A program made the translations under genes and the position numbers. A stretch of 63,931 nucleotides of DNA from positions 54,588,854 through 54,652,784 of the forward strand of contig NC_068991.1 of assembly GCF_001194135.2 (NCBI RefSeq), in the 5' to 3' direction. The notes beneath the pieces are model-generated. The model did no database searches. It had not been told where the DNA came from and saw only the letters and a list, made by a program, of their open reading frames with translations. The first letter of the stretch is position 1. Each line of letters starts with the position of its first letter. Positions 33,664 to 61,800 of this stretch are shown here, piece by piece. This DNA comes from Octopus bimaculoides (Eukaryota).

Positions 33664-36600
33664 GCAGTAGCACAAATTATTAAATTGAAACTCATTAAAT
33701 GTTTATCATTTTGCATGTTATTTATTTTGGATTTTTGTTTGTTTTTAATTTGCTAAACTATATTTCATGTAGTTATATTTCTGAATGTTGACAGCTGTTT
33801 GTGCATTAACTCTGTCTCAAATTTTACTAAACCAGCTTTCCAATTGCTTTATGCAGTAAAGATTTTCTTGCTTTATAATTATTTTTGATTGCATACAATA
33901 TTAATTTATAGTGCATTTAGAAAAAATGTTAAATCTTGTATATAAAACTTACACAAGTATTAAGTTTCTCATAAAATCAAAGACATTTTATTGATAAAAC
34001 TATAAATTTATTAACCTATTTAAGCTAACGATATGCTAAGCGGCTACTTTATTATTTGTTACATCATTACTACTGAATAAAACGATTTATATTATTTTCT
34101 GTGATAAAGAAATATTTTGGCTAAATTTTCTTAAATGTAAGCAAGTTCAATATCTTTTTTGCAATAAAGAGGATGATTTTCCAGTGCCATATTCTCAGTA
34201 TTATTCCCTCTCACAATAAATCTTTGTTTCTTATTATTATTTCATTTCAAAGTCAATATTTTTAAGTGACATTTTATTGAGTTATTTTATTTCTAGATCA
34301 TCATTTATCTTCTGGAGGAAACAATAAACAGTTCAGAATATTAATAACCATCTTTTGTTTCAAATTTTCTGTTGTTCTTTGCTTTTTGTTTTAATGAAAT
34401 CTAATGTAATTTAAATTTTCTTTTATTTTTGTCCTTTCTGAAAATCTTTAGACATCGGCCTGTTCTTGGTGAATGCATTGGAGCTTTTGCTAGCTGCTTT
34501 CCTGTGGCATTTTTGGAACCTAAACTCAATACCTATAATAAATTTTCAGTAATGTATGGCATTAAAGGAAATATTGCTGAACATTCACTGGAAGCACAAG
34601 GTAGGTTTTCAGAACAATTTAACACACTTTCTTTATGAACAATTTTAAAATGCTTTCAGTCCATTAATGCTTTTTGGATTGCCATAGTCATCGACGTTGT
34701 TACATTTTTAGTTCTGTAAATATTCAATACAGAAATAACTGCAATGTAATTTTTGCATTTTTGATTGGTGCAAATTCTTCTTTACATCATTTTCTTTCTG
34801 ATTTCATTAAATGAGGCCATTGCTCTACAATAAAATTATGGTTTACAGTTTGATAAGTATGAAGATTTTAAAACTTATATTATCGTGTCTTAGAAATATA
34901 ATTAAACCTTCAGAGAGTTCAGCAAGACCCACTGGTGGTGTTTACCATATCTCTGCTCATCTAAATAAGCTCATCTTCATCAAACTTTTCAGTGTTTCTC
35001 TTTGCATAGGAATTTACACAAATCCACATAAATGGACATTCTCACACCCAAAATGGTCAAATACTGACCTATCAATCTTGCTTTCAATATTTCAATGATG
35101 AGAGAACACAGTCATAAATATACACCATTTTGTCATCTTCTCAGGGATCAACAATCACTTCAATCAGTTTACTTTCGATAAAATCATATTGGAGATCTGA
35201 TTTCCTCTGTCACATACACCAGTGATGTCCCAACCCTAATGGCCTTTGATAAAAGCAATATTCTTACCTTTCATCTCAACAAAACGTATGTCCATGTCAT
35301 GCATGAGAACTTTCTAAGCTTCCAATATTTGGGTTCCCTTTCTTTTTTTGTCTTTTAGATTGGAAGCTTCCTGTCTGATCTTTTCATTCCAATATGTATC
35401 TATAAGGTTCTTTCTTTCTTAGATGCTGTCACATCTGGTGTATTTTAGGGCTTGTGTATGTCTCCAGGTTATCCTAATGATATTCTCTCTATTACTTATA
35501 AATGCATACACTAGAAACTTGGATTGCCACAGTTGTTACTATCATTGGGATGGCAGAGATGAAAATTGTACACACATGCATACACTACCACATTTGTATA
35601 TAAAATGTCCACATACACACACAAGCATACGTATATACATGCACTAACACACATTACACGTTATAACAGTCATAGATTAAACACTGCTTTTGTATTTAAT
35701 AGTCTTTAACAATCATATTTTCTGCCTTAGTTGCCAACATTAACTATTTATTTATTCTGACTAAATAAAAAGTATTCGTAATTAATATTATTGATGCTTA
35801 TTTTCTTTATCCATCCTTCCATTTCCTTTGCCTGCTACTACAGGAAGGAATATGGGGGTAGAGTCCTCTGTAGAGTCTTATCAGAAACTACTGTCATTAC
35901 TCTCTTTACCTGGATTCTCAAGTGTGACAAGCTGAGACTATTGCAAAGTACTACTGGCTCTACCTGGAGAGTCTTCCTGATCTCTGACCTGTGCACCCTA
36001 TCAAGTAACATTCCTTCAAAGATCCTTTGGAGGAACCCCATTTTATTAACAGGAACAGAAAATAGAAGAGAACCCCAATGAAATTTAAACTTAGATTGTT
36101 TGATTATATACATACAATTGTTCATGTAATGCATTTTCAAATTATATAAATATACATACATTTATAATGAATACACATTTATGATATGTTTGTATTTAAT
36201 ATTATCCCCAACAGCTATATGTCATTGTCGTCTTATTCAAAAATGTATTTCTGTGTTCTAAAAAATGATGATGACATGTTTGCTAATTCTTCTAATAGTT
36301 TCCAATAATTCAAACATTTGTTCCTTTGTACATTGATTGATATAACTAAGATTTTAGCTTTTTCCTCTGTTGAGATCTCAGGGATTGGCATTTCATTTTA
36401 AGTAAATTATTTTATAATTTGTGAAATATGATCCCTTAATCTGTTCTTCAATAATCAGGAGAGGTATTGGAACATTTTCAAATTGTATTCATTAGTTCTT
36501 AATTGGTCTTCTGGTTCATGCATGTGTTTGCAGATGTCAGTTCATCAGAAGGTGAAGCTAAACCTGAAAAGGGGTCAGATGGTATGGTCTTCTCTATGCA

Positions 36601-39199
36601 CTTTTTCCTCTTCTCACTAATTAAGTCGATGGTTTCTAAAAGATAGAAACAAACATACTTTAAATATTTCATTTTCTTTCTCTTTACTAGAGAAACAAAA
36701 TGTTTGGAAATTTATTTCTAGAGTTTAGAGGTTTCAGGAATGAAAGAAAAGGAATTTGTGATTCTGAATAATAATTTGACTTTTTAGAAATCTATTTTTG
36801 CAAATAGATATCGTAGAGATAATTTTCTCATATATATATACACTTTATTTCTTTTTAAATACGTTATTTGGCTACAGTTTCAAAAACTTATCAATTACAT
36901 AATTCCCAGTTTTATTAAAGAAATAATCAAAGATGAAGTCTTATCATAAATTACATGACAAGTTTAGAAAATAGTTATAATGTATTGCAGACCAAACTAT
37001 TTTGGTTATAATTCAATAATAAACAGAGAACCACTTCCTGAGTTCCATAAAGAGAACCTAGTGAGAAATTACTATCTTTCATAGTTATATTCTTTCTATA
37101 AGATGAATCGTTTTAAAATTAAAACTTACAAATTGAGTTAATAAATCATAGATTTTAAATTGCTTCCAACTTCTTTCATTTCTTTCAAATTTATCTGCAA
37201 GGGAAAATGATGCAGAATTTTATATAAAACATCAAAGCCATCATAAGTCTTAACTAATTTACTTGTTCTTTAATCATTGACATTACTAATCCCCATTTCA
37301 TTTAATTGAACACATTTACTATTCAAACTGAATTTTGAACTTTCTGTCTTTTTCTATTTTTATTTCTTTATAATAAATTTTCAATTTTTCTTTTGATTTT
37401 GGTCCAAAGTTTCTGAAAGAAAAAAAAAACATTCTTTTTTTTTTCTTTTCTGTTTTCCCCATGTTTTCTCAAATAGAGACAAATATTGCATTAATTCAAT
37501 ATTTTTGTTTCCTAATTCACTGGTTAAATAATTCATTTAATTTAACTCATTATATTTTGCAGAATAAATAATCTTATTTAATATTCTATTTTTGTGAGGT
37601 TTTTTAACTTTCATATTAAAAGCAGGCATGGTGGAGTGGAAAACTACATTTTCTTTAATAATATACATACAATTAAATTTTATATTCCCATCTATCTTAT
37701 AGCTTTACTTCCTGTGGCCAGTTAACCTTTTGTTAGATACATAAGGATTTTTACATTATCTGTCTCATCTACATATGAAAAACAAAATCCCCCTCACCAT
37801 TTATGGTCGACAGCTAACCTACATACTGATTTACATGTCACAAGAGATCATTATTAACATATAAACTAGAAAATTCCATGTATCATTATTTTTCTTTCAG
37901 AATAAAAAAAATATCAAATTTGTTACTTTTTCTGAAAAACCTTTCCTAGCACTTGGTTCCTGCCATTCTTTGATGTTAATTCCTTTTAATTTATTCTTTA
38001 TATACATGTACATATGTGTAAATGTATAATTAAATATACTCAAGTATATATGTATTCATATACAGACTCATAAATATATATGTATATATATATNNNNNNN
38101 NNNATATATATACATGTATATACACATACATAAATGCATGCAAACATGCATGCATGCATGCATACATACATGCATACATAGATAGATAGATACATGCATA
38201 CATACATACATACATACATACATACATAATGTTTATGTTTAAATATACATGTATATCTATATTTTTGTGTGTATGTCCTTGCTTTGACATCATGAAAAGT
38301 TGTAAATGGGAGTCATCGTCACACAAGCAGTGTCTTTTGTTTCTGATCTTTTGTAAGAACATATCTAACCCTAGAACATAGCTATATCCAACCTCATCAC
38401 CATTATCCTTGTAATGTCTAATTTTGCTTGCTTGAATGGATCAGATGAAATCTGTTAAAGCAGATTTTTTATGGCCAGACACTCTTCATGTCACCAACTC
38501 TCAAATTGCATTCAACCTAGGTATTATTTCACCGTGGCTGGACATGTTTCCACAGGAAGACACTATTTGTATGATGGTGACAATCATTTCCAAATATAGT
38601 GTAATGTGGAGACAAGGAGACATAAACATACACACATCCATGCACAAAAGATATATGTGTGCATGTGTGTGCATGTAGCCAAAAGCTTCTTTTGGTTCCC
38701 ATCTACATGTATGTATGAATGTGAATATATATTTATATATGGAAGAACAACAACAGAGTTTACATTTATCTCTTGTTACTATATTTATTTACTTCTTGAG
38801 AATTGCTGTAAGTCTCTACACATTTAGAAGTTAATTAATTCCTGTATAAAAGATTCTGTAATAATAATTAGTCCTGATTTAAGCACAAGGCCAGCAATTT
38901 TTGAGGGGAGGGTCATAGTGGATGCCATCAATTTCAGTCTTGACTGGTACTTTATTTTATCAACCCCAAAAGGATGAAAGCCAAAGTTGACCTTGGTAGA
39001 ATTTGAATTCAGAATATAGAAGGACAGAAAAAATGCTGGCTTTGGACCTAAATCAGAAACAATAATAATGATAATATAATGTAATAACATAATATAATAT
39101 AATATAATATAATATAATATAATAAATAATAAATAATATAATATAATGAAATAATATAATATAATATAATAAATAATAAATATAATAAAAATAATAATG

Positions 39200-39242
<43 letters not shown>

Positions 39243-39821
39243 TAATAATATTAATAATGATAATAATGGTCACTCGCATCAATTTTGACATATGAATGCT
39301 TGAAGGAAAGGTTTTAAAAAAAATGAAAATAAAAGAAGCAGTATCTATTTGTGATGAATACATGAATGTAATTTAAGATCAGGTATGGATTTTGCTATGA
39401 AGTCACAATGGGGACAATGAGGATTTTGATTTTACCTGGGGTTGGCTTGAATGTGTTTGTTGATTGTAGGATATAATTCTTTCATTGTTCTCTTTCTTCA
39501 ACTCAAATTGTTTTGTCGCATCCTGACACATTTTAGCCCACTCAGATCGATTGAGGCAATAACTTTCCCCAGATGTTAAGTTAAGCTGCAATTAGTAGTA
39601 GTAGTAGTAGTCCTTTCTACTATAGCACAAAACCTGAAATTTTGGGGGAAGAGTAAGTCGATTACATCAACCCCAGTACTCAACTGGTACTTAATTTATC
39701 AACCCCAAAAGGATGAAAAGCAAAGTTGACCTTGGTGGAATTTGAACTCAGAATGTAGTGGCAGAAGAAATACTGCTGAGCATATTGCCCAGTGTGCTAA
39801 CAATTTTGCCAGCCTGCTGCC

Positions 39822-39886
<65 letters not shown>

Positions 39887-40278
39887 NNNNNNNNNNNNNN
39901 NNNNNNNNNNNNNNNNNNNNNNNNNNNNNNNNNNNNNNNNNNNNNNNNNNNNNNNNNNNNNNNNNNNNNNNNNNNNNNNNNNNNNNNNNNNNNNNNNNNN
40001 NNNNNNNNNNNNNNNNNNNNNNNNNNNNNNNNNNNNNNNNNNNNNNNNNNNNNNNNNNNNNNNNNNNNNNNNNNNNNNNNNNNNNNNNNNNNNNNNNNNN
40101 NNNNNNNNNNNNNNNNNNNNNNNNNNNNNNNNNNNNNNNNNNNNNNNNNNNNNNNNNNNNNNNNNNNNNNNNNNNNNNNNNNNNNNNNNNNNNNNNNNNN
40201 NNNNNNNNNNNNNNNNNNNNNNNNNNNNNNNNNNNNNNNNNNNNNNNNNNNNNNNNNNNNNNNNNNNNNNNNNNNNNN

Positions 40279-40376
<98 letters not shown>

Positions 40377-41243
40377 TGGTAGTAGTAGTTTTTTTTTTTT
40401 GTTCCATGAATTTTGAGTCATATTTTCAAAAATATTAAATATCAGATTGATGCAAAAATAATTGCAGGTTTTAACTATCAGTTTTAAAGCAATATAGGGA
40501 TCAAAATAACAACCATTACAGTCTATATATTTTTGCCAATGAAACATAAGGCTATTTATTCTGGTATAATTATGGAGTCCTGAAACTCATAAATTCTTTG
40601 AAGTTCTTTTGAGCTGCTGCTGGGTTTTTGGTGACCTTCAATCATGGTAAGCTATGGAAATGCTTGAAAATGCACAAACACAAACAATAAAATTGCTAAT
40701 TTGCTTTTTTTCTTCATATTTAATTTGACAAACTAAAATATATATATAAACAAATTGTGAAAGTAAAATCATTAGTATAAATTATTAGCCTAAATCATTA
40801 GCAAAAATCATTAGCATAAACCATTAGACCAAAATTTATACCAAATATATATATCTAAATAAAAGTTTATTCAAAAAATGTATCAATGTTTAAAATAACA
40901 AAAACTGCAATTCTTTATACATCAACCTAAGTTTAGTATTTTGTGCAACTGTGCAATACTCTGGAACTGGTAAAACTGAGTAGCTGCACAATATAAACTC
41001 ATCACCATCATCATCACTACCTCAATGACTACCACCATCATCTTAATAATAATGATAGTAATAATTATTTACATCATTTACATTTGACGGATATTTGTCC
41101 TCATCTTGTTTGTTGCTAACACAACATTTTGACTGATATACCCTCCAGCATTCACTATGCCATATGCCCATGGACATATAGCATAGTGGTTAAGAACGTG
41201 GGCTACTAACCCCAAGATTCCGAGTTCGATTCCAGGCAGTGAT

Positions 41244-41280
<37 letters not shown>

Positions 41281-44200
41281 TTGAAAAATACCTTAGGAAT
41301 GAGAACCCAGGTTCGAAACTTCCCCAAGACACCTGATGAAGGCTGGAGGGTATATCAGCCGAAACGTTGTATTAACAAAAAACAAGATGAGGACAAATAT
41401 CCATCAAATGTAAATAATGTAAATAATGTACATAATTCCTCATCTCTTAAATATAGAACTGGATAATAATAAAAATAAAAATAATAATAATAATAATNNN
41501 NNNNNNNNNNNNNNNNNNNNNNNNNNNNNNNNNNNNNNNNNNNNNNNNNNNNNNNNNNNNNNNNNNNNNNNNNNNNNNNNNNNNNNNNNNNNNNNNNNNN
41601 NNNNNNNNNNNNNNNNNNNNNNNNNNNNNNNNNNNNNNNNNNNNNNNNNNNNNNNNNNNNNNNNNNNNNNNNNNNNNNNNNNNNNNNNNNNNNNNNNNNN
41701 NNNNNNNNNNNNNNNNNNNNNNNNNNNNNNNNNNNNNNNNNNNNNNNNNNNNNNNNNNNNNNNNNNNNNNNNNNNNNNNNNNNNNNNNNNNNNNNNNNNN
41801 NNNNNNNNNNNNNNNNNNNNNNNNNNNNNNNNNNNNNNNNNNNNNNNNNNNNNNNNNNNNNNNNNNNNNNNNNNNNNNNNNNNNNNNNNNNNNNNNNNNN
41901 NNNNNNNNNNNNNNNNNNNNNNNNNNNNNNNNNNNNNNNNNNNNNNNNNNNNNNNNNNNNNNNNNNNNNNNNNNNNNNNNNNNNTATATGCCTTCAGATA
42001 TGTTAGAAATATATTTTATTCCAATAAAAGTCAAGAAATTTCTGAAGCATTATTGAAATATATCTTTTAAAAACAAATTTACTATATTTTATAATCAAAT
42101 ACATTCTGTAAAATGATTACAATCAAATAATTTAAATAGTTATTTTTCTAATTAACATTTTGTCAATTTATCAAAATATTTGTTTGTAAAATATTAGAAA
42201 TAATTAATATTACATATCATTTAATAAATATATTGGTAAAATAATAAGTGTATAAAATATATAGTAAGTATATGAAATGTATATAGTAAGTTTCCTACCA
42301 TAAAAAAAATCACTTTTAACATTTCCTCAGTTGGAAATTTTGATAAGAATAATATATGGCAAAAAAATATCTTGTAAAAGCTTTGTTAATAGAAATTTAA
42401 TTTTCAGTGTAAAAGCAATTTCAATTTTTTGAAGACAAGTATTTTCTCTGAAATATTCCTTCATGGTTTTCCCTTATGTGTTTCAGTCTTGTGCCAGATG
42501 TAATGAATCCAAGTGTAATTTATTATAATTATTTAAAATTCTGAATTACAAAACAATTGTATTGTTAATATTATTCACAGATGTGATGGACAGTTTATCT
42601 GAATGCGTGCCTGGCTTAGAGTCTATCATCACAGATATTGACAAACTTGCTGAATCTGGTGGGGATTGTCAAGATTCTCCACACATTATGGATGTCACTT
42701 TGCCAATGTTATGCAGGTAAGGTTCTTCACTGACAAATATCCATTTTTCACAGGTGAATTTTACCCTTAAAAATAAAGAAACTCAGAGCCATAACATAAA
42801 AAGAATCTCTCTCAAAACTTTGTCTTGGGGAGAATAACTTAATAATTATACCAAAAAGAAAAAACAACTTTTAATGTAAAATGTAAAGAAATATTGTTTC
42901 TTTAATTACTGTAGTTGTTATTGTTGCTATTTGACCATAAGCCAGTCCTATTCAAAGTAAAAAGTTATTGGCAGTCTTTGCATAGAAGGTTTAAAAAATA
43001 ATTATTTTTAATTAGGTTTTAAAATTTAAAATTTTAGAAAAAAGAAAAACATTAAGAAAACTATTATCTGCCTTGTATTATCAACTTTATATAAACCAGT
43101 TAATCATTTATGCACCTGTCAATGACATATTTTATTATTTTTATAGTTATTTACCATTCTGGTGGTCTCAAGGACCAGACAATGCTTCTTCTACAGATGG
43201 GTAAGTCAGTTATTGTCATTGTTTTGGTGTTTACTTTTACAAAGAGAAATAATATTGAATTCTTTGTTTTTCTAAAAAATTATTTTTCTTTAAATTTATC
43301 ATCATACTGTACATGATTGTTACTATTGTTATTGTTTAGATTAACTAACTTAGAGTAGCTTAGCAGTTCAGCAAAACAGACTGATAGAATAAATAAAAGT
43401 CTTTAAAAGATAAATGCTGGGGTTGATTTGTTCAACTAAACCTTTTAACCCTTTTGATACTGTATTTATTTTGAGATGTTCTGCGTTTCTTTCAATTACT
43501 TTAAATATAACAAAAAATTTAATAAAATAACTTAGTTATCATTCAGCTAGTGTTAGGAACATAAATTATGACTTAGGTTTGATGGAAGATTTTAATTCAA
43601 AACTCATGGAAACAAGATATTTGTACTCAGAACCAGAGCCTGTTTTAGCCAGGTTGGTAACAAAAGGGGGAAGACAGTACCCCCAGCATGGCTACTATTC
43701 AATGATTGAAACAAGTTAAAGATAAAAAATGAAAGATAATTTGATGAAATTTTTCCATGAATATCCTTATATTTATTTCCAGTCATTAAAATTCTGACAT
43801 TCTTCAGTTGTTTGTAAGATACTTTAGATAATGAATTTTCTTAAACTGGTGTAAAACCAAATTGTAAGTTAAATATTTCACTGAAACCTTAAAAGAAAAA
43901 CTTTTATGAGAAAATGGTGTGAAATAAAAGTGTTATTCATGCACTTGAAATTTTTGAAAAATCTTCCAATAATTTCTAGTACAAATATCAATTACAGGTA
44001 ATATCCAAGTCATTACTCATAAGTGTGTCTGAGGTTAGTTGTCAAAGTCCTTCTTTTAACTGATGTGCTATGGTTCTGAACTTTCTCATGTTCCTCTTCT
44101 CCTAGGCCCACCTGCTCCAGGCTTACTCAGATACAATGGCAGCTTTCCTTATAAGATAGTTGTCACTGTAGCAAGATCTCCTCAAGACTTTGAATCAATG

Positions 44201-47200
44201 ATGAAGTCTTTTAAAGTTCTAAGAGTGTCCTCCTTGTACTTTTGCTACCCACTGACCAAACACTGCCCTCCCCACTCTACAAACTTACTCTGAAAGAGAC
44301 ATTACAGAGATCACTTGTCAACCATACTGGCAATGTGACCAAACCACCATATCTGAGATTTGCAAAGAGAATGTGGATGTTGAGCATCACTGAGCCATTG
44401 AGGACCTTGGTATGAGACTTTGTCCTACCAATAAATGTAGAGTATTTTATGCATAATGTTCCAACTCCCAACTGTAAAGAACTGTTCCTCTTAGAATTCT
44501 TCCTCTTATGTCACATTTAAAATTAAACCTTGGAATTATTTCTTCCAGCAATCATGTGACAACTGTAACAGCAACTTTAATGAATGAAGTATTGGGGAAA
44601 GTACTTCGTCTCATATTGAACAATGTCAATAATCCAAATGCTTCCTGGATGAATCGGATTGCATGTGAGTGTTCAGTTTTCTCTTTCGTCTTTTTTCTTT
44701 TCATGTTTATTTTTTCATCAAGTTTACCAAATGTTGAAGTAGCATTATATTACTGACAAATTAAGGTAGTAAGCTGACAGAAATTCATTACAGTATTAAT
44801 CACATTCAATTGTACACATTTCTCTTTAGTTATGTCAATACTGTCTTTAAAAAAGCATGAATCTCACAAGATCTCATTTTTTGTCACCAGTATTTTCTTT
44901 ACATTAGTATTCAGTCTTTCAAATGAAAATAATAATAATTTTCCCTAATGAAATCTTGCAATTCTAAATTAATTCAAATAACTATATCTAGTTCCATTTT
45001 AGAAACATTTAAGAAACAATATTCATTATTATGCAAAAAAGTTCATTTATTAAAATTGTTAAAATTTATCATGTATCTCCATTTGTATTTTTTTTTTTTT
45101 TTGACACATGAGTAAATAATATTTACAGTAGTACTGAGCTCTATAGATTAATTTCTTACTTCTAACTCTTCTAGCTCGAGTTCAACCAATCATTGGTAAC
45201 TCAACACCATATATGGTTGAAGAACATTTCCTACCAATAGCTAAAAAGATTCAAACATGTGCTCTGAATGTTGAACATGCTGAGAAGAAACTCTCTGATC
45301 GTAGAGTCAGTAGTGATAATTCAGATTTGGAAGGAGAACTTCAGCAGGTTTGTACAATAAATATTAATAATATGGTTTATATATTTCATGTCACTGATGT
45401 GTATTTGTATATGTCGTGTATTTATATTTTGGAGATGCGTTTGCCAGGCAAGTGATTTAATCAGAAACAGTATATTGAAAGTAAAACAATTATGGCATGA
45501 AAGATACAAATTAGCCATTTGTAAAAACATACAAATTGTTTAGAAAATAAACAGTGACCAGGCTGCAATTGCTGAGAGGAAAATTTTAACCCTAAATAAT
45601 AAATGTTTAAGTGAAGTTAACAGATATTTTGTTTTTGAATGGCTAAAATGTACATATTTTGTCATCATCATTTAACATCAGCTTTCCAAGCTGGCATGAG
45701 TTGGACGTTTTGACAAGAGCTGGCCAGTTGGGGAGCTACACAGGCTCCAGTAGTCTGTTGTGGCATGGGTTCTACAGCTGGATGCCCTTCCCAACACCAG
45801 CCACTTCACAGAGTGTACTGGGTGTTTTTTATGTGGCACCAGCATGAGTGCTTTTGTGTAGCACTGGCACAGGCACATTTACGTGGAACCAGCATGGGTG
45901 CTCTTATGTGGTACTGGTATGGGTGCACTTACATGGCACTGGCATGGGTGTGTTTACGTGGTAATGGCACAGGTGCTTTTATTTGGCACCAGCACCAAAT
46001 CTTCTATTTGGGCACTTCTATTTTAAGTAAAGAAAGAAGACATTAGGTATTATAGACCTTTGTAGACCTTGACATTGTCCTAAAAAGACTGAATGGCTAT
46101 GTCTGGAATGCCTTTTATTATAGTTCTGATTGATCAGGAGGTGATTTAAAGTTCACTAATATTGACATTCTCAACCTAAACTATGTCTATAATAAAAGTA
46201 TTTACCTGTTAGATAACACTATGCACTCCAGAATGATAGGCAGTAATTCTTTACAACCAAAGATTATACCCACTTGTGCATTTTCCACTCTTTCCTCATC
46301 ACTTCCGAGTACTTAATCTGATTGACCCTATCCTAAGCAGTTTGTTTAATCTTTCCTCTTTAAAAACACCTTGAAATCTATTCCTACCCATCTATTCTCT
46401 CCAACCAATAAGATATAGATGCAGGCTGGATCATGTGATTAAAAAGTATGCTGTTCAGTTACATGTTTCAGATTTGATCCCATGTAACACATAGCCTGGT
46501 GAGTGAAACTTGGTAGATGAAAACTGTGTTGAATCCAATTGGAAAGATTGTCCTTATTCTTGAGTACCTGACTTAATCCATTGCCTGGTTTAACACTTCC
46601 ATGTTCTTCTTGACAGTCTTTAACAACAGTCTTTCTGTTGCAAGCATTTTTTTTATTTCTCTGGTCTGAGAATATTCTGTCATCCTCTACCAGTCTTGGA
46701 GGCCTTAAAATAGATATGGACACTATCTTTTCTCCTCTTTCTCCTCCATTATCAAAATTCAAAAATTAAAATCCAACAAGAACTGCTCCAAGCAGATGCA
46801 GTTATCCTAACTGCTCTTATTAGAACTATAGTTACACGTGACTCCTACAGCAAACACATAAATGGACTACTGATATAAGTGGCTCCTTCTACTGCTAACA
46901 CATAAACAGACTACAGATACAAGTGACTCTTCTACTGCAATCACATAAATAGACAACAGATACAAGTGACTCCTTCTACAGCTACAAATAAATAGACTAT
47001 AGGTGATTCCTACGACTAACTCATAGACTATAGATGTAAGTGAATCCTTTTACAGCTAACATATAACTAGACTATAGATACAAATAATGTTTTCTACAGC
47101 TAATGTATAAATGAACTATAAACAGCACAAGTGACTCTTTCTACAGCTGACACATAAATAGACGATATATTCAAATCATTCCTGCTATAGCTAATACACA

Positions 47201-47814: not shown

Positions 47815-50465
47815 GTGTGTGTTGAGTAAAAACGTTGTATGATATTTAGATATGCTGTTACATCCCTTTTATACCAAAGTGGATTTAACCACTTGATAAA
47901 TATCGATAAAATAAGTTACAGACCGAGAACTAAATACTGGGGTCAATATATCTAACTAAAACCCTTGAAGGTTGTGAACACATCGTTGTTGCACTTCAAA
48001 AAAGGATTGAAGCCAATCAAAGAAAATGAAAAGTATCAAAAAATAAATTTTTCTCCATGGACTGAACACAAGCAAATTGTAGTCTCTGATGCACTGTCAG
48101 AAAATAGACAGACCAACTCCTTTTTTCAGTTCAGAGAGAGATTATATAAACAATTGTTTATAATTATTTAGTATTTTCAATTTCACATGCAACACAGACT
48201 AAAATTTATACTAGTACTACAACTACAATAGATATGCTCTAACAAATATTTACATTATCCAAAACAAGCTACGTAGTAGATTAATAATTAATTAATTGAC
48301 CTAACTACAAGGAAAATGAAATATATGAAAATTGGATTTTCAGTTTGGTGAGGTTCTTGATAACAGTGACAGTTTATACAATGTCTCGGTGGACAGAAGA
48401 TAGGTCAATATGCAGCCTGTGATGAGCTGCTCCCAAATGGGACTGAAACCATTCAACTTGATCCCATTTTTTCTGCCCATGAAGAGACTGGATGTGCATT
48501 TTTTAAAATATTTATTCCATATATCTATACTGAAATAAGTTTACAATCAACTTGATTGACAAATAAATATATAGTAGGATGATTTCCCATATAAATATTT
48601 TGCTGCATAAATTAAAATTATATAATTGGAAAATAATAAATATTCTCTTATATCTTGGGAGGGTCATTATGCTAAAAATAAACATACATACTCATTCTAT
48701 TTCACTTCTTTATTCTTATTGGTCATTTAAATAGTTAACTAATTGATTATTTGATTAATTGCTTGGTCAATCAATCAGCTAGGTACTCAAAGTCTTTATG
48801 TTGCATGTAATGGTTGTATTTTCCTCTTGGTAAAATATTCATTCCATTCTATTAATTTAGCTGTTCAAGAGAGAAGAACAAAACTTTGTATCTCAGAATG
48901 AGATAGACAACATGGCATTGATTATGCCCAGCCAAGCTAAAGGATTGTCAGTTGTGAAAGTTGAAGACGACCAAACCAGACAAACATCTGGAAGAAAGAA
49001 AGACAAGAAAAGATTAGAAGCTCATAACAGTCTAAATGTAGCTTGTCTCAAGCGGTTGTTCCCTATTGGCCTCAGTTTCTTCAGCGGAAGAGAGCAGGAG
49101 CTACTGCAGTACACCAAAGAAAAGCTTATAAGAGTATGTAATACAGTTTCTGCTATAGGGAAAATAAAAACTTAATTTAAGACCTTTTAGGAAAATACTT
49201 ATATATGTCGAGCGAGATCGTTGCCAGTGCCCCTGGACTGGCTTGTGCGGGTGGCACATAAAAGACACCATTTCGAGCGTGGCCGTTTTCGTGCGGGTGA
49301 CACGTAAAAGCACCCACTACACTCTCTGAGTGGTTGGCGTTAGGAAGGGCATCCAGCTGTAGAAACTCTGCCAAATTAGACTGGAGCCTGGTGTTGCCAT
49401 CCGGTTTCACCAGTCCTCAGTCAAATCGTCCAACCCATGCTAGCATGGAAAGCGGACGTTAAACGATGATGATGATGATGATGATGACAAAGTTAAAAGT
49501 AATATAGTTTAAGTATTTGTATTCTTTATTTCGAAATATATATACATAAGTAAATAAAAATATCTAAAATTAAACAAGTTTCTTTGAAACAATACATTTT
49601 AAATCAATTGTAAATACGATAAAATTCCTAAAATATAAGAATGAAAGAATAACATTAAAGCTTTTTAGGTATTTAGCAAATTAAAAATAAATGAAATGTT
49701 TTAATCATTGTTTTAAAATAAATGTAATTATGATCCTATTAGAGCAATATTTAAAGCAGTTTGATTGGTTCGAAAATTAAATGACAAAACAATTAAATAG
49801 TATCTAAACAGTTGTAAATATATCTTCAAGAAATATTTTTGAAGTTTTTCTTCTCCAAATTGTTTCCTAAACCAGCATGTTTGGTGTTTCTTTGAAGATT
49901 TCTATTTGTGAAGCTAATCTTTGAGAAGTGGTTCACTCATGTAGCACTAATAACTCAGCCATGGAGGAAAAGTATAATCACTCCTCACCATCAATCAATT
50001 AATCATCTAATGCACTACAAGTTAGTCATCTTAGTATAAAATATGTCAGTGTATATACATTCATGTATGTGTGTATACCCATACATATATGTATTATACA
50101 GGTGTAAATGTCATATATATTATATTCTTTTATGTGTGTATATATATATGCATGTATGTGTGTGTGTATACACACATATATATATGCATATACACACACA
50201 TATCTTTCTATATATGGTTTTTTATAGAGATTCTGTAGGCTATCATCATTTCATTTGATAAAACCATACCAATACTTCACCAGAACATATCCATTAATAT
50301 TCAGTAATCAAGTCATAGGATGATGCTAATTATTATTGTCTTTTGGTGTGGTTTGCTTTGAACAAATTGATTTTAATTCTTACCCATTTTTTTATCTAAT
50401 CACACATCTATGGGGTTACTACAATAATGGAAATAAACTTTTATAGGCCCAGATATATGACTTTG

Positions 50466-51945: not shown

Positions 51946-52448
51946 CTCTTTTACTTATTTCAGTCAATTCACTGTAGCCATGCTGAAGCACCACTTTTCA
52001 GTTGAAGAAATTGACCCCCGGACTTATTCTTTGTAAGTCTGGTGCTTATTATATCAGTCTCTTCTGCCAAACCACTAAGTTATGGGGATGTAAACACAGC
52101 AACATCAGTTGTCAAGTAATGGTGGTGGATACAAACAGATACAAACACACACACATAAATATATACATACATCATCATCATCATTGTTTAACGTCCGCTT
52201 TCCATGCTAGCATGGGTTGGATGATTTGACTGAGGACTGGTGAACCAGATGGCTACACCAGACTCCAATCTGATTTGGCAGAGTTTCTACAGCTGGATGC
52301 CTTTCCTAACGCCAACCACTCTGAGAGTGTAGTGGGTGCTTTTACATGCCACCGGCACGAAGGCCAGTCAGGCGGTACTGGCAACGTCCACGCTCAAAAT
52401 TGTGTATTTTACCTGCAACCTGCATGGGAGCCAGTCCAGCGGCACTGG

Positions 52449-52492
<44 letters not shown>

Positions 52493-58857: not shown

Positions 58858-61800
58858 TCTCTGCCGATCAAACTCCCAACCCACGACTAAGTCTTAAGTG
58901 TATATATATATACAGGCAACACACACACTAAATAAAAAAGATGTTAGTAAGTAAAAGTGTTTTAAAAAAGATTGTTAAATTTTCAGATTAACACCCGTAC
59001 GATTTTCACTACAGTGTTAGGTTAGGGTTTGTTAGGGTTATGATGCGGGTGTTAATCTCAAGATTTGCGAAAAGATTTTGAAAAAACTCACAGTTTGTAT
59101 GGAATAAATGTTTGTTGATCGTATTTGAGAAAGATGTCTCGATGGTGAAGGACGGTGTTAGAAATGGAAAGTAAACTTACAATTCCCGCCAAATTGGAAT
59201 GAGGTCATTGGTAACCATAGGTACATATATATGTGTGTATTTACGTATGATTGATAGTGTGTCTGTTTATTTGACTCTCACTCTCCTTCGTTTCTCTGTC
59301 GAAGAAAAAACTTCGATCGTTCGTAAAGGTTCATAAGAGAAAGTAGCAATTGAAACGATGTGTAAGAGGAATAGAAATAGTTAATTTTAGAGGGGCAAAG
59401 TAATTTTGTATGTAGTTTTAGTATCTGTCATTAGAGTATCGAAATGTGATTGTTTCAGTTTTGATCTTTTTGTATTTGTTGTTGGATTCATCGTAAATGT
59501 TCATAAGAGAAAGTAGGAGTTGAAAGGATTTGTATTAGAAAGAGGAAATTAGATTTTATTAGGGAGAAAATATTTACTGCTGTAGTTTTATGGATTTTAT
59601 TCATTATTAGGACTTTTTGGAGTGAAAAAATGACGCAGTGACCTAACAAATTGTATTTAGGATATTAATTGCGATTGTTTAATCGAAGAAATTTGGAATT
59701 GTGTAAATGTATGAATTTTAAACATACACACACACACACACAGTAAATTTGCCTTTTATAGTATAGATACTGAAGTAGATTTCTTTGACTAACTCTACAA
59801 AGTTGTGCTCCAGCATGGCTGCAATCCAATGACTGGAGCAAGTAAAAGAGTTAAGTAGTATTAAATTAGATCTATATTAAAAACAACTCAAACCTGTTTG
59901 ATGGATGGTAACTAAATAGAATTGCTACATTTGCAGGTTGAACATCCATCTCTTGGACTTAAGGGTGCTTGGAGAAAAGTCATCTCATCACAAAGAAAAC
60001 GTGCTGTGATGGCCTGTTTCCGTATGGTTCCACTTTATGGCTTACCAAGGTAAGAATTACAAATTTATCATTTCATATAGTTAAACATCAATAATTCTAT
60101 AAATGCAATAAATGTTTTATTTTCTCAAGCCCTGTCTCTCCCCTCTCTCTTTCTCTCTCATTACCCTCTCTTTCTGTTCCTCTCTCTCTGTCCCTCTCTC
60201 TCTCTTGTCCCTATGTCTCCCTACCTACCTCCCATTCTTTCTCCCTACCTGTCCACCTCCTTCTCTTTCTTCCTCCTCTCCTTATTTTCTTCCCTCCCCC
60301 TCTATATCTCTCTCACAGTCTCTCTCTCTCATTGTAAAACACATCTTCATTCTTATTGGTGTTTCTCCTACTTCACTAAACAAGGGAGTCTCTATGCACT
60401 TGTTCAACTTGCTAGAAATAGAAGCATTATCATAATCATCATCATCATTTAACGTCAGTTTTTCATGTTGTCATGAGTTGGACGGTTTGACAGGAACAAG
60501 CAAGGCAGAGAGCTGCACCAGGCTCTAGTTGTATGTTTTGGCATGGTTTCTATGGCTGGATGCCCTTCTTGACACCAACCACTCTACAGAGTGTACTGAG
60601 TGCATTTTACACGGCACTAACACAGATGCTTTATACAATGCACCAGCACAAGTGCTTTTTACACGGCATCAGAAACCAGTGCAGTTTTATGTGGCACCAA
60701 CACAGGTACCTTTTGCATGGCACCAAAAAAGAATACTTTGGACAATGTGATTTGTCAGGATGCACAATGCCTCAGCAAAACACGAGCCATTCATGGCTGG
60801 TGTGTCATTTCTCATAAGTTTGTTCCAGACAACGTCTTCAGTTGGTATTGATACATCGATTAGAAAGTATTTTTTTCTTGATGATCTCTGACAACTATAT
60901 CTGGCCTATTGGTCTTAATTTCTCTATCTGTGTGTATTGACATATCCCATAGTATGGTTGCTTTCTCATTTTTCTCATTATTATTATTATTATTATTATT
61001 TTCATTTTTATTATTGTTAGACATCGAGCCATGAACCTATTTTTGAAGGCGTATCGTCTAACATGGCTTGCTACAGAAGAAGTCAGTAAAAATGTTCTTA
61101 TCGAAGATCTAACTGTAAGTAATACTTTTACACACACACACACACACACATGTATGTTGTTTCATGTCAAATGAATAAGAAAGATATGTTCAATGTATGA
61201 TGTAGAGGATATGCTAGTTTTATTGAAATTGACATAGTGTTTGTTTCATGAACTGAATTTCATGCCTCTGGAATTTGATTCAGGCCACTGTTTCCCGTGG
61301 AGATCACAGAGATATGAAGCTCAGGTCGTAAGATAAACTCTGTATCAGTTTCAATAACAAAAATTTATGTGTGCCTGTATGTATGCATATTTAGAGGGGA
61401 AAGAGAAATTGTTAAATTAATAATAATGATAATTACTACATTCTGCGTGTTTGTATTTTCTGTATGGATATATGCATCTGATTTGTGGGGAAATGTATAT
61501 ATATTGTATGTGTATGTATGTGTGTGCACATTTGTGTGAGAGCTTGAACTTGCACTTATACACATCTCAGCTTCATAATAAAGCAATATTTAATCATGAA
61601 TATAATGCTAAATTTGTATTTTTATTGCGTAACTTATTTTATTATACATGATTTGGGGTTTTTCTTTTTTAATTTTCAGATTGCTAAAGAGGAAGAAGAA
61701 GAAGTTGAGAAGAAAGAAGTAGAGGAAGACAAAAAACCAGATCCTCTCAATCAATTAATCATTGCATTATGTCGAGGCGCAACCAAAGAACAAAGTGATG

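What the first reader, a model, noticed from the sequence alone, without database searches (positions are those of the whole stretch)
36519..36587. Probable unannotated 48-nt cassette exon adding an acidic/Ser-rich loop to RyR
Seen: tttgcag acceptor, G|gtatgg donor, symmetric phase 1-1 matching the w16/w17 junction, stop-free and purine-rich. It would insert [16 protein letters not shown] between EAQ and DVMDSL. A TGCATG and further UGC motifs sit immediately 5' of the acceptor. Known: TGCATG is the Rbfox element, which upstream of an exon typically represses inclusion. Inference: a tissue-regulated (neural vs muscle) RyR isoform in the bridging solenoid; w16 and w17 join in frame without it.
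Basis: partly seen in the sequence, partly recalled or inferred. Interest (0 to 1): 0.7.

Follow-up and report, generated by a model that had tools for sequence, protein, structure and literature searches.

The report
Probable small optional exon in RyR
A 48-base stretch inside a large intron of a ryanodine-receptor calcium-channel gene looks like a real optional coding exon that adds 16 acidic amino acids, but no transcript or close-relative genome could be consulted to prove it is used.

Summary
Window 36534-36581 (+) is a 48-nt stretch bounded by tttgcag| and |gtatgg. It is stop-free in phase 1-1 and would insert [16 protein letters not shown] between ...SLEAQ (exon 34452-34600) and DVMDSL... 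(exon 42581-42716). Those two exons join in frame without it.

Splice sites, symmetry and an open frame are not rare on their own: about 0.5-0.7 such decoys are expected in this intron. The codon usage is rare:
- It scores +13.4 bits in exactly the required frame, against +0.4 and -20 in the other two.
- 0 of 6 Mb of simulated intron reaches that score.
- Across the whole window, both strands, only seven loci reach it: four training exons, one held-out real RyR exon, one unexplained locus in a TE-like ORF, and this candidate.

I judge it a real, lineage-specific, in-frame cassette exon with probability about 0.6.

The Rbfox-repression reading is untested, since TGCATG occurs 76 times in the window. 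The acceptor also fits an SRRM/eMIC-type short neural exon: weakest 3' splice site, two UGC next to the AG, UCUUCU tract.

No cephalopod transcripts or genomes were reachable. The orthologous intron in termite and annelid-like hosts holds no such exon. If real, it is a new member of a known kind, and of modest interest.

The parts
34452..34600 (+). It encodes (R)[12 protein letters not shown]...AEHSLEAQ and ends in phase 1 (CAA G|gtaggt).
   Evidence: It aligns to RyR1 3187-3229 and to homologues P0001-P0006 and L001-L071.
36499..36503 (+). Putative branch point UUAAU. The branch A is at 36502, 32 nt before the exon. No AG lies between 36496 and the 3' splice site, so the AG exclusion zone is 36 nt.
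   Evidence: Sequence reading and motif positions. This is a consensus match only and was not tested.
36505..36512 (+). GGTCTTCT, the only pyrimidine block of the acceptor region (a UCUUCU, PTB/SRSF11-type motif). An identical octamer recurs just after the donor at 36586-36593.
36519..36524 (+). TGCATG (Rbfox-type hexamer) at -15 to -10 from the exon, between the branch point and the AG.
   Evidence: The hexamer is common in the window (76 copies).
36529..36533 (+). TGCAG: a second UGC abutting the 3' splice-site AG (36532-36533).
   Evidence: Only 2 of 21 real exons in the window have any UGC within 20 nt of their AG.
36534..36581 (+). Candidate 48-nt cassette exon, phase 1-1. It encodes (D)[15 protein letters not shown](D).
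   Evidence: Codon-usage log-odds is +13.4 bits in the required frame only. None in 6 Mb of simulated intron reaches that. It is one of 7 loci in the whole window, both strands, at that level. The region is unique in the window and has no Rfam match.
36552..36557 (+). Internal alternative donor CAGAAG|gtgaag. It would give an in-frame 18-nt microexon (36534-36551) encoding DVSSSE.
   Evidence: Its generic donor score is 3.67, against 2.77 for the distal donor.
36582..36587 (+). Donor gtatgg of the 48-nt form.
36586..36593 (+). Second copy of GGTCTTCT, overlapping donor positions +5 to +12. It is followed by more CU-rich sequence (TCTTCT again at 36609).
42581..42716 (+). It encodes (D)[14 protein letters not shown]...TLPMLC and starts in phase 1.

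Best explanation
Window 36534-36581 is a genuine, lineage-specific, in-frame alternative cassette exon of the ryanodine-receptor gene.

Default splicing joins 34600 to 42581 and gives the ancestral ...SLEAQ|DVMDSL... protein. Inclusion of the 48 nt inserts a 16-residue acidic, Ser/Lys/Gly-rich loop, probably disordered, with S-x-x-E motifs of the casein-kinase-2 type. The loop lands at a position equivalent to about residue 3229/3230 of rabbit RyR1, in helical domain 2 / the bridging solenoid.

The exon is built to be skipped unless helped:
- Its 3' splice site is the weakest of all exons in the window.
- The branch point is 32 nt away, and the pyrimidine tract is interrupted.
- Recognition would have to come from the purine-rich exonic enhancer-like sequence (GAAGGUGAAG, GAAAAGGGG) and from factors binding UGC/UGCAUG and UCUUCU next to the splice sites.

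What is shown is the sequence anatomy, the frame-specific coding signal and the conserved position of the host intron. What is inferred is that it is spliced at all, in which tissue, and by which factor (Srrm234-eMIC-type activation, or Rbfox/PTB repression).
For: 1. All splice, phase and frame features are present.

2. Codon-usage log-odds was trained on 20 other RyR exons of the window against its introns.
- The candidate scores +13.4 bits over 17 codons, with 16 of 17 codons positive.
- The other two frames score +0.4 and -20.1, and the reverse-strand frames score at most +4.3.
- The signal rises at the AG and falls at the GT.

3. Nulls for that score:
- 0.02% of stop-free intronic 17-codon windows reach it.
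- 0.08% of composition-matched stop-free shuffles reach it.
- 0 of 6 Mb of 4th-order-Markov intron sequence reaches it together with the splice criteria.

4. Scanning the whole window, both strands and all frames, only 7 loci reach this score:
- four training exons;
- one held-out genuine RyR exon (63330-63395, a positive control);
- one locus inside a TE-like ORF that had no Pfam match;
- the candidate.
None of the seven lies on the minus strand.

5. The region is single-copy in the window and matches no RNA family.

6. The host intron is ancient. The same phase-1 intron position occurs in RyR loci of termite and annelid-like hosts.

7. Small optional in-frame exons of 12-45 bp are well documented in invertebrate RyR genes (PMC3989282; PMC7644089). 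Drosophila RyR has eMIC-dependent splicing (bioRxiv 10.1101/2021.02.24.432780).

8. The acceptor has two UGC within 15 nt of the AG, while only 2 of 21 real exons have any. It also has the lowest acceptor score, a 36-nt AG exclusion zone and a UCUUCU block. This matches the published architecture of SRRM3/4-dependent short exons.
Against: - No transcript evidence of any kind exists. The protein collection holds no cephalopod RyR, the exon's genomic ORF is not on record, and the peptide pattern is absent from metagenome contigs.
- No genome of a close relative could be compared.
- The orthologous intron in three other lineages has no conserved island and no comparable exon.
- Look-alikes do arise by chance. 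A termite acid-rich phase-1 segment, ESLENEKEHGKVQD, loses its AG in 3 of 8 loci.
- The insertion splits the most conserved motif of the stretch, S-L-E-A-(Q/K)|(D/E)-(V/I)-M.
- The acceptor scores below every real exon.
- The codon model rests on only 933 codons and rewards acidic codons.
- Decoys from a GC-rich repeat family reach similar total scores over longer lengths.
- The AlphaFold model was too poor to say whether the site is a loop (pLDDT 52).
Confidence: 0.6

Rival explanations
1. It is a chance pseudo-exon: an intronic stretch that happens to carry AG...GT, a length divisible by three and an open frame, and is never spliced into mRNA.
For: - Decoys meeting the same splice, symmetry and open-frame criteria occur at 0.07-0.095 per kb per phase. 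That means about 0.5-0.7 are expected in this 7-kb intron and about 4-5 in all introns of the window.
- The acceptor is weaker than that of any real exon.
- A comparable acid-rich decoy exists in the termite intron and is not conserved.
- No exon was found in the orthologous introns of other lineages.
Against: - The frame-specific codon signal is not explained by chance.
- None of the roughly 570 decoys in 6 Mb of simulated intron reaches it.
- 0.08% of composition-matched shuffles reach it.
- No locus on the minus strand of the window reaches it.
Confidence: 0.2
2. It is a relic of coding sequence that is no longer used: a dead former exon, or a fragment of a transposon or other gene that landed in the intron and kept coding-like composition. 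The splice-like edges and the frame would then be a coincidence of about 1 in 9.
For: - The intron-rich window is full of repeats and TE-like ORFs. Some of them score high in the codon test: 12641-12694, and the GC-rich repeat family.
- The exon is absent from other phyla.
Against: - The stretch is single-copy in the window.
- The coding signal starts and stops exactly at the AG and the GT, with no extension into the flanks as a TE ORF fragment would usually show.
- No protein in the 5.8-billion collection shares words with the insert other than RyR hits through the flanks.
Confidence: 0.1
3. The unit actually used is the 18-nt microexon 36534-36551 (DVSSSE), spliced at the internal donor GAAG|gtgaag. 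The 48-nt form would be minor or unused.
For: - The internal donor scores higher than the distal one, 3.67 against 2.77, and is also in frame.
- 18 nt fits the strict microexon definition of 3-27 nt, and the UGC-rich acceptor fits microexon architecture.
Against: - The 30 nt after the internal donor carry 8.1 of the 13.4 bits of coding signal, which would not be expected of intron.
- The 18-nt form alone scores 5.3 bits, a level reached by about 0.035 decoys per 7 kb in simulation.
Confidence: 0.1

Closest known systems
Small optional in-frame exons of invertebrate ryanodine receptors. Examples are Bactrocera dorsalis ASII-ASIV (45, 12 and 24 bp; PMC3989282) and the C. elegans unc-68 DR2 alternative exons (PMC7644089).
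   Same: A single-copy RyR gene is diversified by short, in-frame, skippable exons in the cytosolic region. The inserts are short and lie between conserved blocks. Their use is tissue- and stage-dependent in the described cases.
   Different: - None of the described sites is at this position. The insect sites lie in SPRY2, between SPRY3 and RIH2, between RyR repeats 3 and 4, and near the RIH-associated domain. The worm sites lie in DR2.
- The candidate here has no cDNA evidence.
SRRM3/4 (Srrm234 eMIC domain)-dependent short neural exons, including the eMIC-dependent splicing of Drosophila RyR (bioRxiv 10.1101/2021.02.24.432780; 10.1101/2024.09.17.613571).
   Same: - It has a very weak 3' splice site, with the branch point and pyrimidine block set back from the AG.
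- UGC motifs lie between them and the AG, and there is a CU-type tract.
- The host gene is an intracellular calcium channel.
- The published programmes are lineage-specific, which fits the absence of this exon in other phyla.
   Different: - At 48 nt it is longer than the strict 3-27 nt definition. Only the 18-nt alternative form qualifies.
- The donor is not strong.
- Neural inclusion and dependence on Srrm234 are untested.
Rbfox-regulated cassette exons ((U)GCAUG position-dependent RNA map).
   Same: A UGCAUG sits upstream of the exon. By the established map (my knowledge), that position predicts repression. Lying between the branch point and the AG, it could hinder assembly of the 3' splice-site complex.
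   Different: - There is a single copy of a hexamer that is frequent in this window (76 copies).
- There is no downstream copy within 1.5 kb (next + strand copy at 38135), no conservation data and no functional data.
Vertebrate RyR splice regions: RyR1 ASI (3481-3485) and ASII (3865-3870), and the RyR2 24-bp and 30-bp inserts. These are from my knowledge and the references listed in PMC8301844.
   Same: They are short, in-frame, developmentally and tissue-regulated inserts in the cytosolic assembly that tune channel gating.
   Different: They lie at different positions; ASI is about 250 residues C-terminal of this site. They also have independent origins.

Membership tests
Ryanodine receptor gene (host) | The flanking exons encode RyR sequence collinear with solved RyR structures. 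| tested here: met
   RyR3/RyR1/RyR2 chains match at E 3e-13 to 1e-10, covering RyR1 3187-3278; further RyR exons lie along the whole + strand of the window.
In-frame alternative cassette exon | Canonical AG and GT, with a plausible branch point and no intervening AG. | tested here: met
   The acceptor score is 0.18, the weakest in the gene, and the donor score is 2.77.
In-frame alternative cassette exon | The length is divisible by 3, the frame is open in the phase set by the neighbours, and the neighbours join in frame without it. | tested here: met
   Homologues show the skipped form SLEA(Q/K)(D/E)(V/I)M as contiguous sequence.
In-frame alternative cassette exon | Coding character beyond the intron background, in the correct frame. 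| tested here: met
In-frame alternative cassette exon | Both inclusion and skipping junctions are seen in transcripts. | not testable with these tools
   No cephalopod transcripts are in the protein collection. The ORFs are not on record.
In-frame alternative cassette exon | Splice sites and frame are conserved in related species. | tested here: inconclusive
   - No close relative was available.
- In distant lineages that share the intron (termite hosts, annelid-like hosts, L020/L031/L033) there is no conserved island and no comparable exon.
- This shows the exon is not ancient, not that it is unreal.
Rbfox-regulated exon | (U)GCAUG within about 300 nt of the exon. | tested here: met
   TGCATG lies at 36519-36524.
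Rbfox-regulated exon | The motif occurs beyond chance or is conserved. | tested here: not met
   There are 76 copies in the window on both strands, about 0.6 per kb per strand, so a copy within 300 nt of a given exon is unremarkable. Conservation is not testable.
Rbfox-regulated exon | Splicing changes with Rbfox level or tissue. | not testable with these tools
   This requires an experiment.
SRRM3/4 (eMIC)-dependent microexon | Exon length of 3-27 nt. | tested here: not met
   The main form is 48 nt. Only the alternative 18-nt form (internal donor at 36552) qualifies.
SRRM3/4 (eMIC)-dependent microexon | UGC between branch point and AG, a weak 3' splice site with a set-back pyrimidine/UCU tract, and a long AG exclusion zone. 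| tested here: met
   - UGC lies at -15 and -5; 2 of 21 real exons have any.
- UCUUCU lies at -27 to -22, and the branch point lies at -32.
- The AG exclusion zone is 36 nt.
- The acceptor score is the lowest in the gene.
SRRM3/4 (eMIC)-dependent microexon | Neural-specific inclusion that depends on the eMIC domain. | not testable with these tools
   This requires an experiment.

The most novel reading that the evidence does not exclude
A cephalopod-lineage-specific short neural exon of the SRRM/eMIC type arose de novo in an ancient RyR intron. It inserts a phosphorylatable acidic loop into helical domain 2 of the channel. This would be a parallel to the eMIC-dependent RyR splicing of Drosophila, acquired independently, and would give neurons and muscle different calcium-release channels from a single gene.
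Probability: 0.2. Interest if true: 0.5.

Novelty: new member of a known kind. Interest (0 to 1): 0.3.

Why it matters
Invertebrates are reported to have a single RyR gene, which must serve both muscle and neurons (PMC7644089). In insects and nematodes, short optional exons are how that one gene is diversified.

A confirmed cephalopod-specific insert in the bridging solenoid would add a new regulatory site to RyR. It would also give a concrete test case for how neural or muscle splicing programmes are rewired between phyla.

In practice, it would mean that gene models of this locus lack an isoform. It is not a new kind of biology.

Tried and rejected
- Protein search with the inclusion-form peptide found 6 RyR fragments, none cephalopod and none with an insert.
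- Exact look-ups of the genomic ORF carrying the exon, and of a large real-exon ORF, found nothing on record. The source genome is therefore not in the collection.
- A degenerate DNA pattern for the 16-residue peptide found 0 hits in JGI metagenome contigs.
- Exon-duplication origin was considered. The candidate and w17 both start ATGT, but local alignment gives only 11 of 13 matches, so I rejected it as chance.
- Repeat or TE origin found no support. There is no second copy in the window, and Pfam finds nothing in the inclusion protein or in the neighbouring TE-like ORFs.
- Intron-hosted small RNA was checked. No Rfam match came near any gathering score.
- A missing small exon between 21771 and 34452 was rejected. 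CG|A joins in frame as ...SFSHR|HRP..., as in the lophotrochozoan-type homologues.
- I looked for conserved cassettes in the orthologous introns of other lineages and found none.
- The AlphaFold2 model of the inclusion form had pLDDT 52 and was uninformative.
- Literature searches for cephalopod or mollusc RyR splicing found nothing relevant. The 2026 preprint that includes Octopus bimaculoides tissue-specific exons has no supplementary tables held.
- The organism itself could not be identified with these tools.
Full report
**What is there**

- The upstream RyR exon ends ...CTG GAA GCA CAA G|gtaggt at 34600.
- The downstream exon begins cacag|AT GTG ATG GAC at 42581.
- Between them lies an intron of 7,980 nt that contains two larger assembly gaps, N runs at 39887-40278 and 41498-41984, plus a 10-N run at 38094-38103.
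- At 36534-36581 sits ATGTCAGTTCATCAGAAGGTGAAGCTAAACCTGAAAAGGGGTCAGATG, preceded by gtgtttgcag and followed by gtatgg.
- With the G carried over from the upstream exon it reads [17 protein letters not shown].
- Inclusion therefore gives ...[27 protein letters not shown]... and skipping gives ...SLEAQDVMDSL....
- TGCATG lies at 36519-36524, and a second TGC abuts the AG.

An internal donor, CAGAAG|gtgaag at 36552, is also in frame and would give an 18-nt version encoding DVSSSE.

**The host gene**

The flanking exons match RyR3, RyR1 and RyR2 chains in the PDB at E 3e-13 to 1e-10. In the alignment to rabbit RyR1 (3187-3278) the insert falls in the gap between about I3229 and L3230. By published domain maps (my knowledge) that is helical domain 2 / the bridging solenoid. 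Other RyR exons are spread along the + strand of the whole window.

**Is it more than chance?**

*Splice sites and frame alone: no.*
- With a generic splice-site matrix the candidate acceptor scores 0.18. That is below every real exon of the window (0.4-9.1), although its neighbours w16 and w17 are also weak at 1.4 and 1.5.
- The distal donor scores 2.77 and the internal donor 3.67, against 0.2-8.8 for real donors.
- At those thresholds no other phase-1 symmetric open segment exists in this intron.
- The minus strand of the window has 13 phase-specific decoys in 61.6 kb.
- A 4th-order Markov simulation of the introns gives 0.095 decoys per kb.
- So 0.5-0.7 are expected in this intron and several in the window.

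*TGCATG: no.* It occurs 76 times in the window on both strands.

*Coding character: yes.* I built a codon-versus-intron-triplet log-odds table from 20 other RyR exons of the window (933 codons).
- The candidate scores +13.4 bits over 17 codons in the frame dictated by the neighbouring exons.
- The other two frames score +0.4 and -20.1, and the reverse-complement frames score at most +4.3.
- 16 of 17 codons are positive.
- In a sliding profile the signal rises at the AG and falls at the GT.
- Per codon it scores 0.79. That exceeds every real exon even when those are scored with themselves in the training set (0.18-0.63; leave-one-out mean 0.25).

Nulls for that score:
- 0.02% of all stop-free 17-codon windows in the window's introns reach it.
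- 0.08% of composition-matched, stop-free shuffles of the 48 nt reach it.
- None of about 570 splice-flanked decoys in 6 Mb of simulated intron reaches it, and only one exceeds 10 bits.

The most telling result is an exhaustive scan of both strands and all frames of the 64-kb window. It finds only seven loci at or above 13.4 bits:
- four training exons;
- the exon 63330-63395 ([14 protein letters not shown]...), a genuine RyR exon that was not in the training set and so serves as a positive control;
- one locus inside a TE-like ORF (12641-12694), which had no Pfam match;
- the candidate.

None of the seven is on the minus strand. The candidate region is also single-copy in the window and matches no RNA family.

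Caveats:
- The training set is small.
- The score favours acidic codons.
- Longer segments from a GC-rich repeat family reach similar totals.

**Comparative evidence**

The protein collection contains no cephalopod RyR. It returned six fragments, none with an insert at this junction. Exact look-ups showed that the source genome is not in the contig collection.

A metagenome scan with an alignment of the flanking exons returned 70 RyR loci from host DNA.

| Loci | Likely host | Intron at this junction |
|---|---|---|
| L021-L028 | termite (gut metagenomes) | same phase-1 position, ...CA(A/G) G\|gt...ag\|A(T/G)GT.ATG |
| L037-L069 group | annelid-like | same position and phase |
| L020, L031, L033 | unidentified | same position and phase |
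| L001-L019 | various | absent, the two exons are fused |

The host intron is therefore old.

None of those introns contains a conserved island or a comparable phase-1 exon. The termite intron holds an acid-rich look-alike, ESLENEKEHGKVQD. It is no better conserved than its flanks and lacks its AG in three of eight loci. That is a useful warning that such look-alikes arise by chance.

The exon, if real, is thus restricted to the lineage of this genome. Whether it is shared among octopuses, squid and cuttlefish could not be tested.

**How it probably works**

The acceptor region reads UUCUUAAUUGGUCUUCUGGUUCAUGCAUGUGUUUGCAG|A.
- A branch-point match lies 32 nt upstream.
- A short UCUUCU block is the only pyrimidine run.
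- Two UGC follow, one of them inside UGCAUG, before the AG.
- The AG exclusion zone is 36 nt.
- Only 2 of 21 real exons in the window have any UGC within 20 nt of their AG.
- The octamer GGTCTTCT recurs immediately after the donor (36586-36593).
- The exon itself is 65% purine, with GAAGGUGAAG and GAAAAGGGG.

This is the anatomy of an exon that is skipped by default and included only with help. Published work describes SRRM3/4 (eMIC)-dependent short neural exons as follows:
- They have very weak 3' splice sites.
- UGC lies close to the AG, and the UCU/CUC tracts are set back from it.
- They have long AG exclusion zones.
- They are repressed by PTB.
- Drosophila RyR is among the eMIC-dependent genes.
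- These programmes are largely lineage-specific.

That reading predicts neural activation. The sequence cannot tell the two apart, and the 48-nt length is outside the strict microexon range.

At the protein level the insert splits the invariant S-L-E-A-(Q/K)|(D/E)-(V/I)-M motif. Because it begins with DV and is followed by DVM, both half-motifs are locally restored. In vertebrate RyRs the equivalent point is a Gly/Pro-containing linker (...AILGLPNS...), so a loop insertion is plausible. The AlphaFold model was too weak to show this (pLDDT 52).

**Comparison with what is known**

Short optional in-frame exons are a standard feature of invertebrate RyR genes:
- Bactrocera has 45-, 12- and 24-bp optional segments plus a mutually exclusive pair (PMC3989282).
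- C. elegans unc-68 has alternative exons in DR2 (PMC7644089).
- An insect-wide survey is given in PMC6026295.

None of the described sites is at this position. If confirmed, this is a new member of a known kind.

**Verdict**

| Question | Verdict |
|---|---|
| Observation | confirmed |
| Real, used cassette exon | probability about 0.6 |
| Chance pseudo-exon | about 0.2 |
| Unused coding relic | about 0.1 |
| 18-nt form is the main product | about 0.1 |
| Tissue regulation and Rbfox repression | unproven |

An SRRM/eMIC-type mechanism is at least as well supported by the anatomy as Rbfox repression. Interest is modest (0.3).

Noticed in passing
L021-L028, L037-L069, L020/L031/L033 versus L001-L019; window 34600/42581: The phase-1 intron between SLEA(Q/K) and (D/E)(V/I)M sits at an identical position in RyR loci from termite-gut, annelid-like and other host DNA. 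It is absent (exons fused) in many other invertebrate loci. It is therefore an old intron with repeated loss.
   Followed up: yes
window 59937-60049: The exon encoding the calmodulin-binding-site homologue ([27 protein letters not shown]) has the second-weakest acceptor in the training set and, like the candidate, two UGC at -14 and -5 before its AG. An insect survey (PMC6026295) notes that this site is alternatively spliced in some species. It may be a regulated exon here too.
   Followed up: partly
window 36505-36512 and 36586-36593: An identical octamer GGTCTTCT flanks the candidate exon on both sides. The upstream copy lies at -29 to -22 from the acceptor and the downstream copy at +5 to +12 of the donor. 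It could be a paired PTB-type site or chance.
   Followed up: partly
window 19742-20317, 49208-49316 (-), 52333-52452; similar ORFs near 45647-46043 and 60491-60848: A GC-rich repeat family has several copies in the RyR introns, tandemly duplicated at 19.7-20.3 kb across a 10-N gap. It scores as 'coding-like' and is the main source of false positives in composition-based exon scans. It has no Pfam match.
   Followed up: partly
window 12294-12815: A long open frame in an intron looks by eye like a decayed DDE/mariner-type transposase (DEKNFCQDQ...[12 protein letters not shown]). Pfam gave no hit at E <= 0.01, so this is unconfirmed.
   Followed up: partly
window 21771/34452: Exon 21690-21771 joins directly to w16 across a 12.7-kb intron (CAT CG|A CAT = H-R-H). 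The protein therefore lacks the roughly 13 residues (RKFLxxEMEK-like) that arthropod RyRs have before HRP. The lophotrochozoan-type loci (L001, L002, L033...) show the same short form.
   Followed up: yes
L021-L028, intron positions about 626-664: Termite RyR introns hold an acid-rich, phase-compatible AG...GT segment (ESLENEKEHGKVQD). It is no better conserved than its flanks and has lost the AG in 3 of 8 loci. This is a worked example of a chance pseudo-exon in the orthologous intron.
   Followed up: yes
L002 (Ga0123370_1041863, 16.7 kb): This contig carries w15-w18 equivalents contiguously without introns and is about the length of a RyR mRNA. It is probably a near full-length RyR transcript of an unidentified lophotrochozoan, 63% identical over this stretch, and would be useful as a reference for exon mapping.
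   Followed up: no
window 3901-4761, 24999-25276, 28491-28766, 39887-40278, 41498-41984: Assembly gaps (N runs), two of them inside the intron that hosts the candidate. Further small exons could be hidden there.
   Followed up: no
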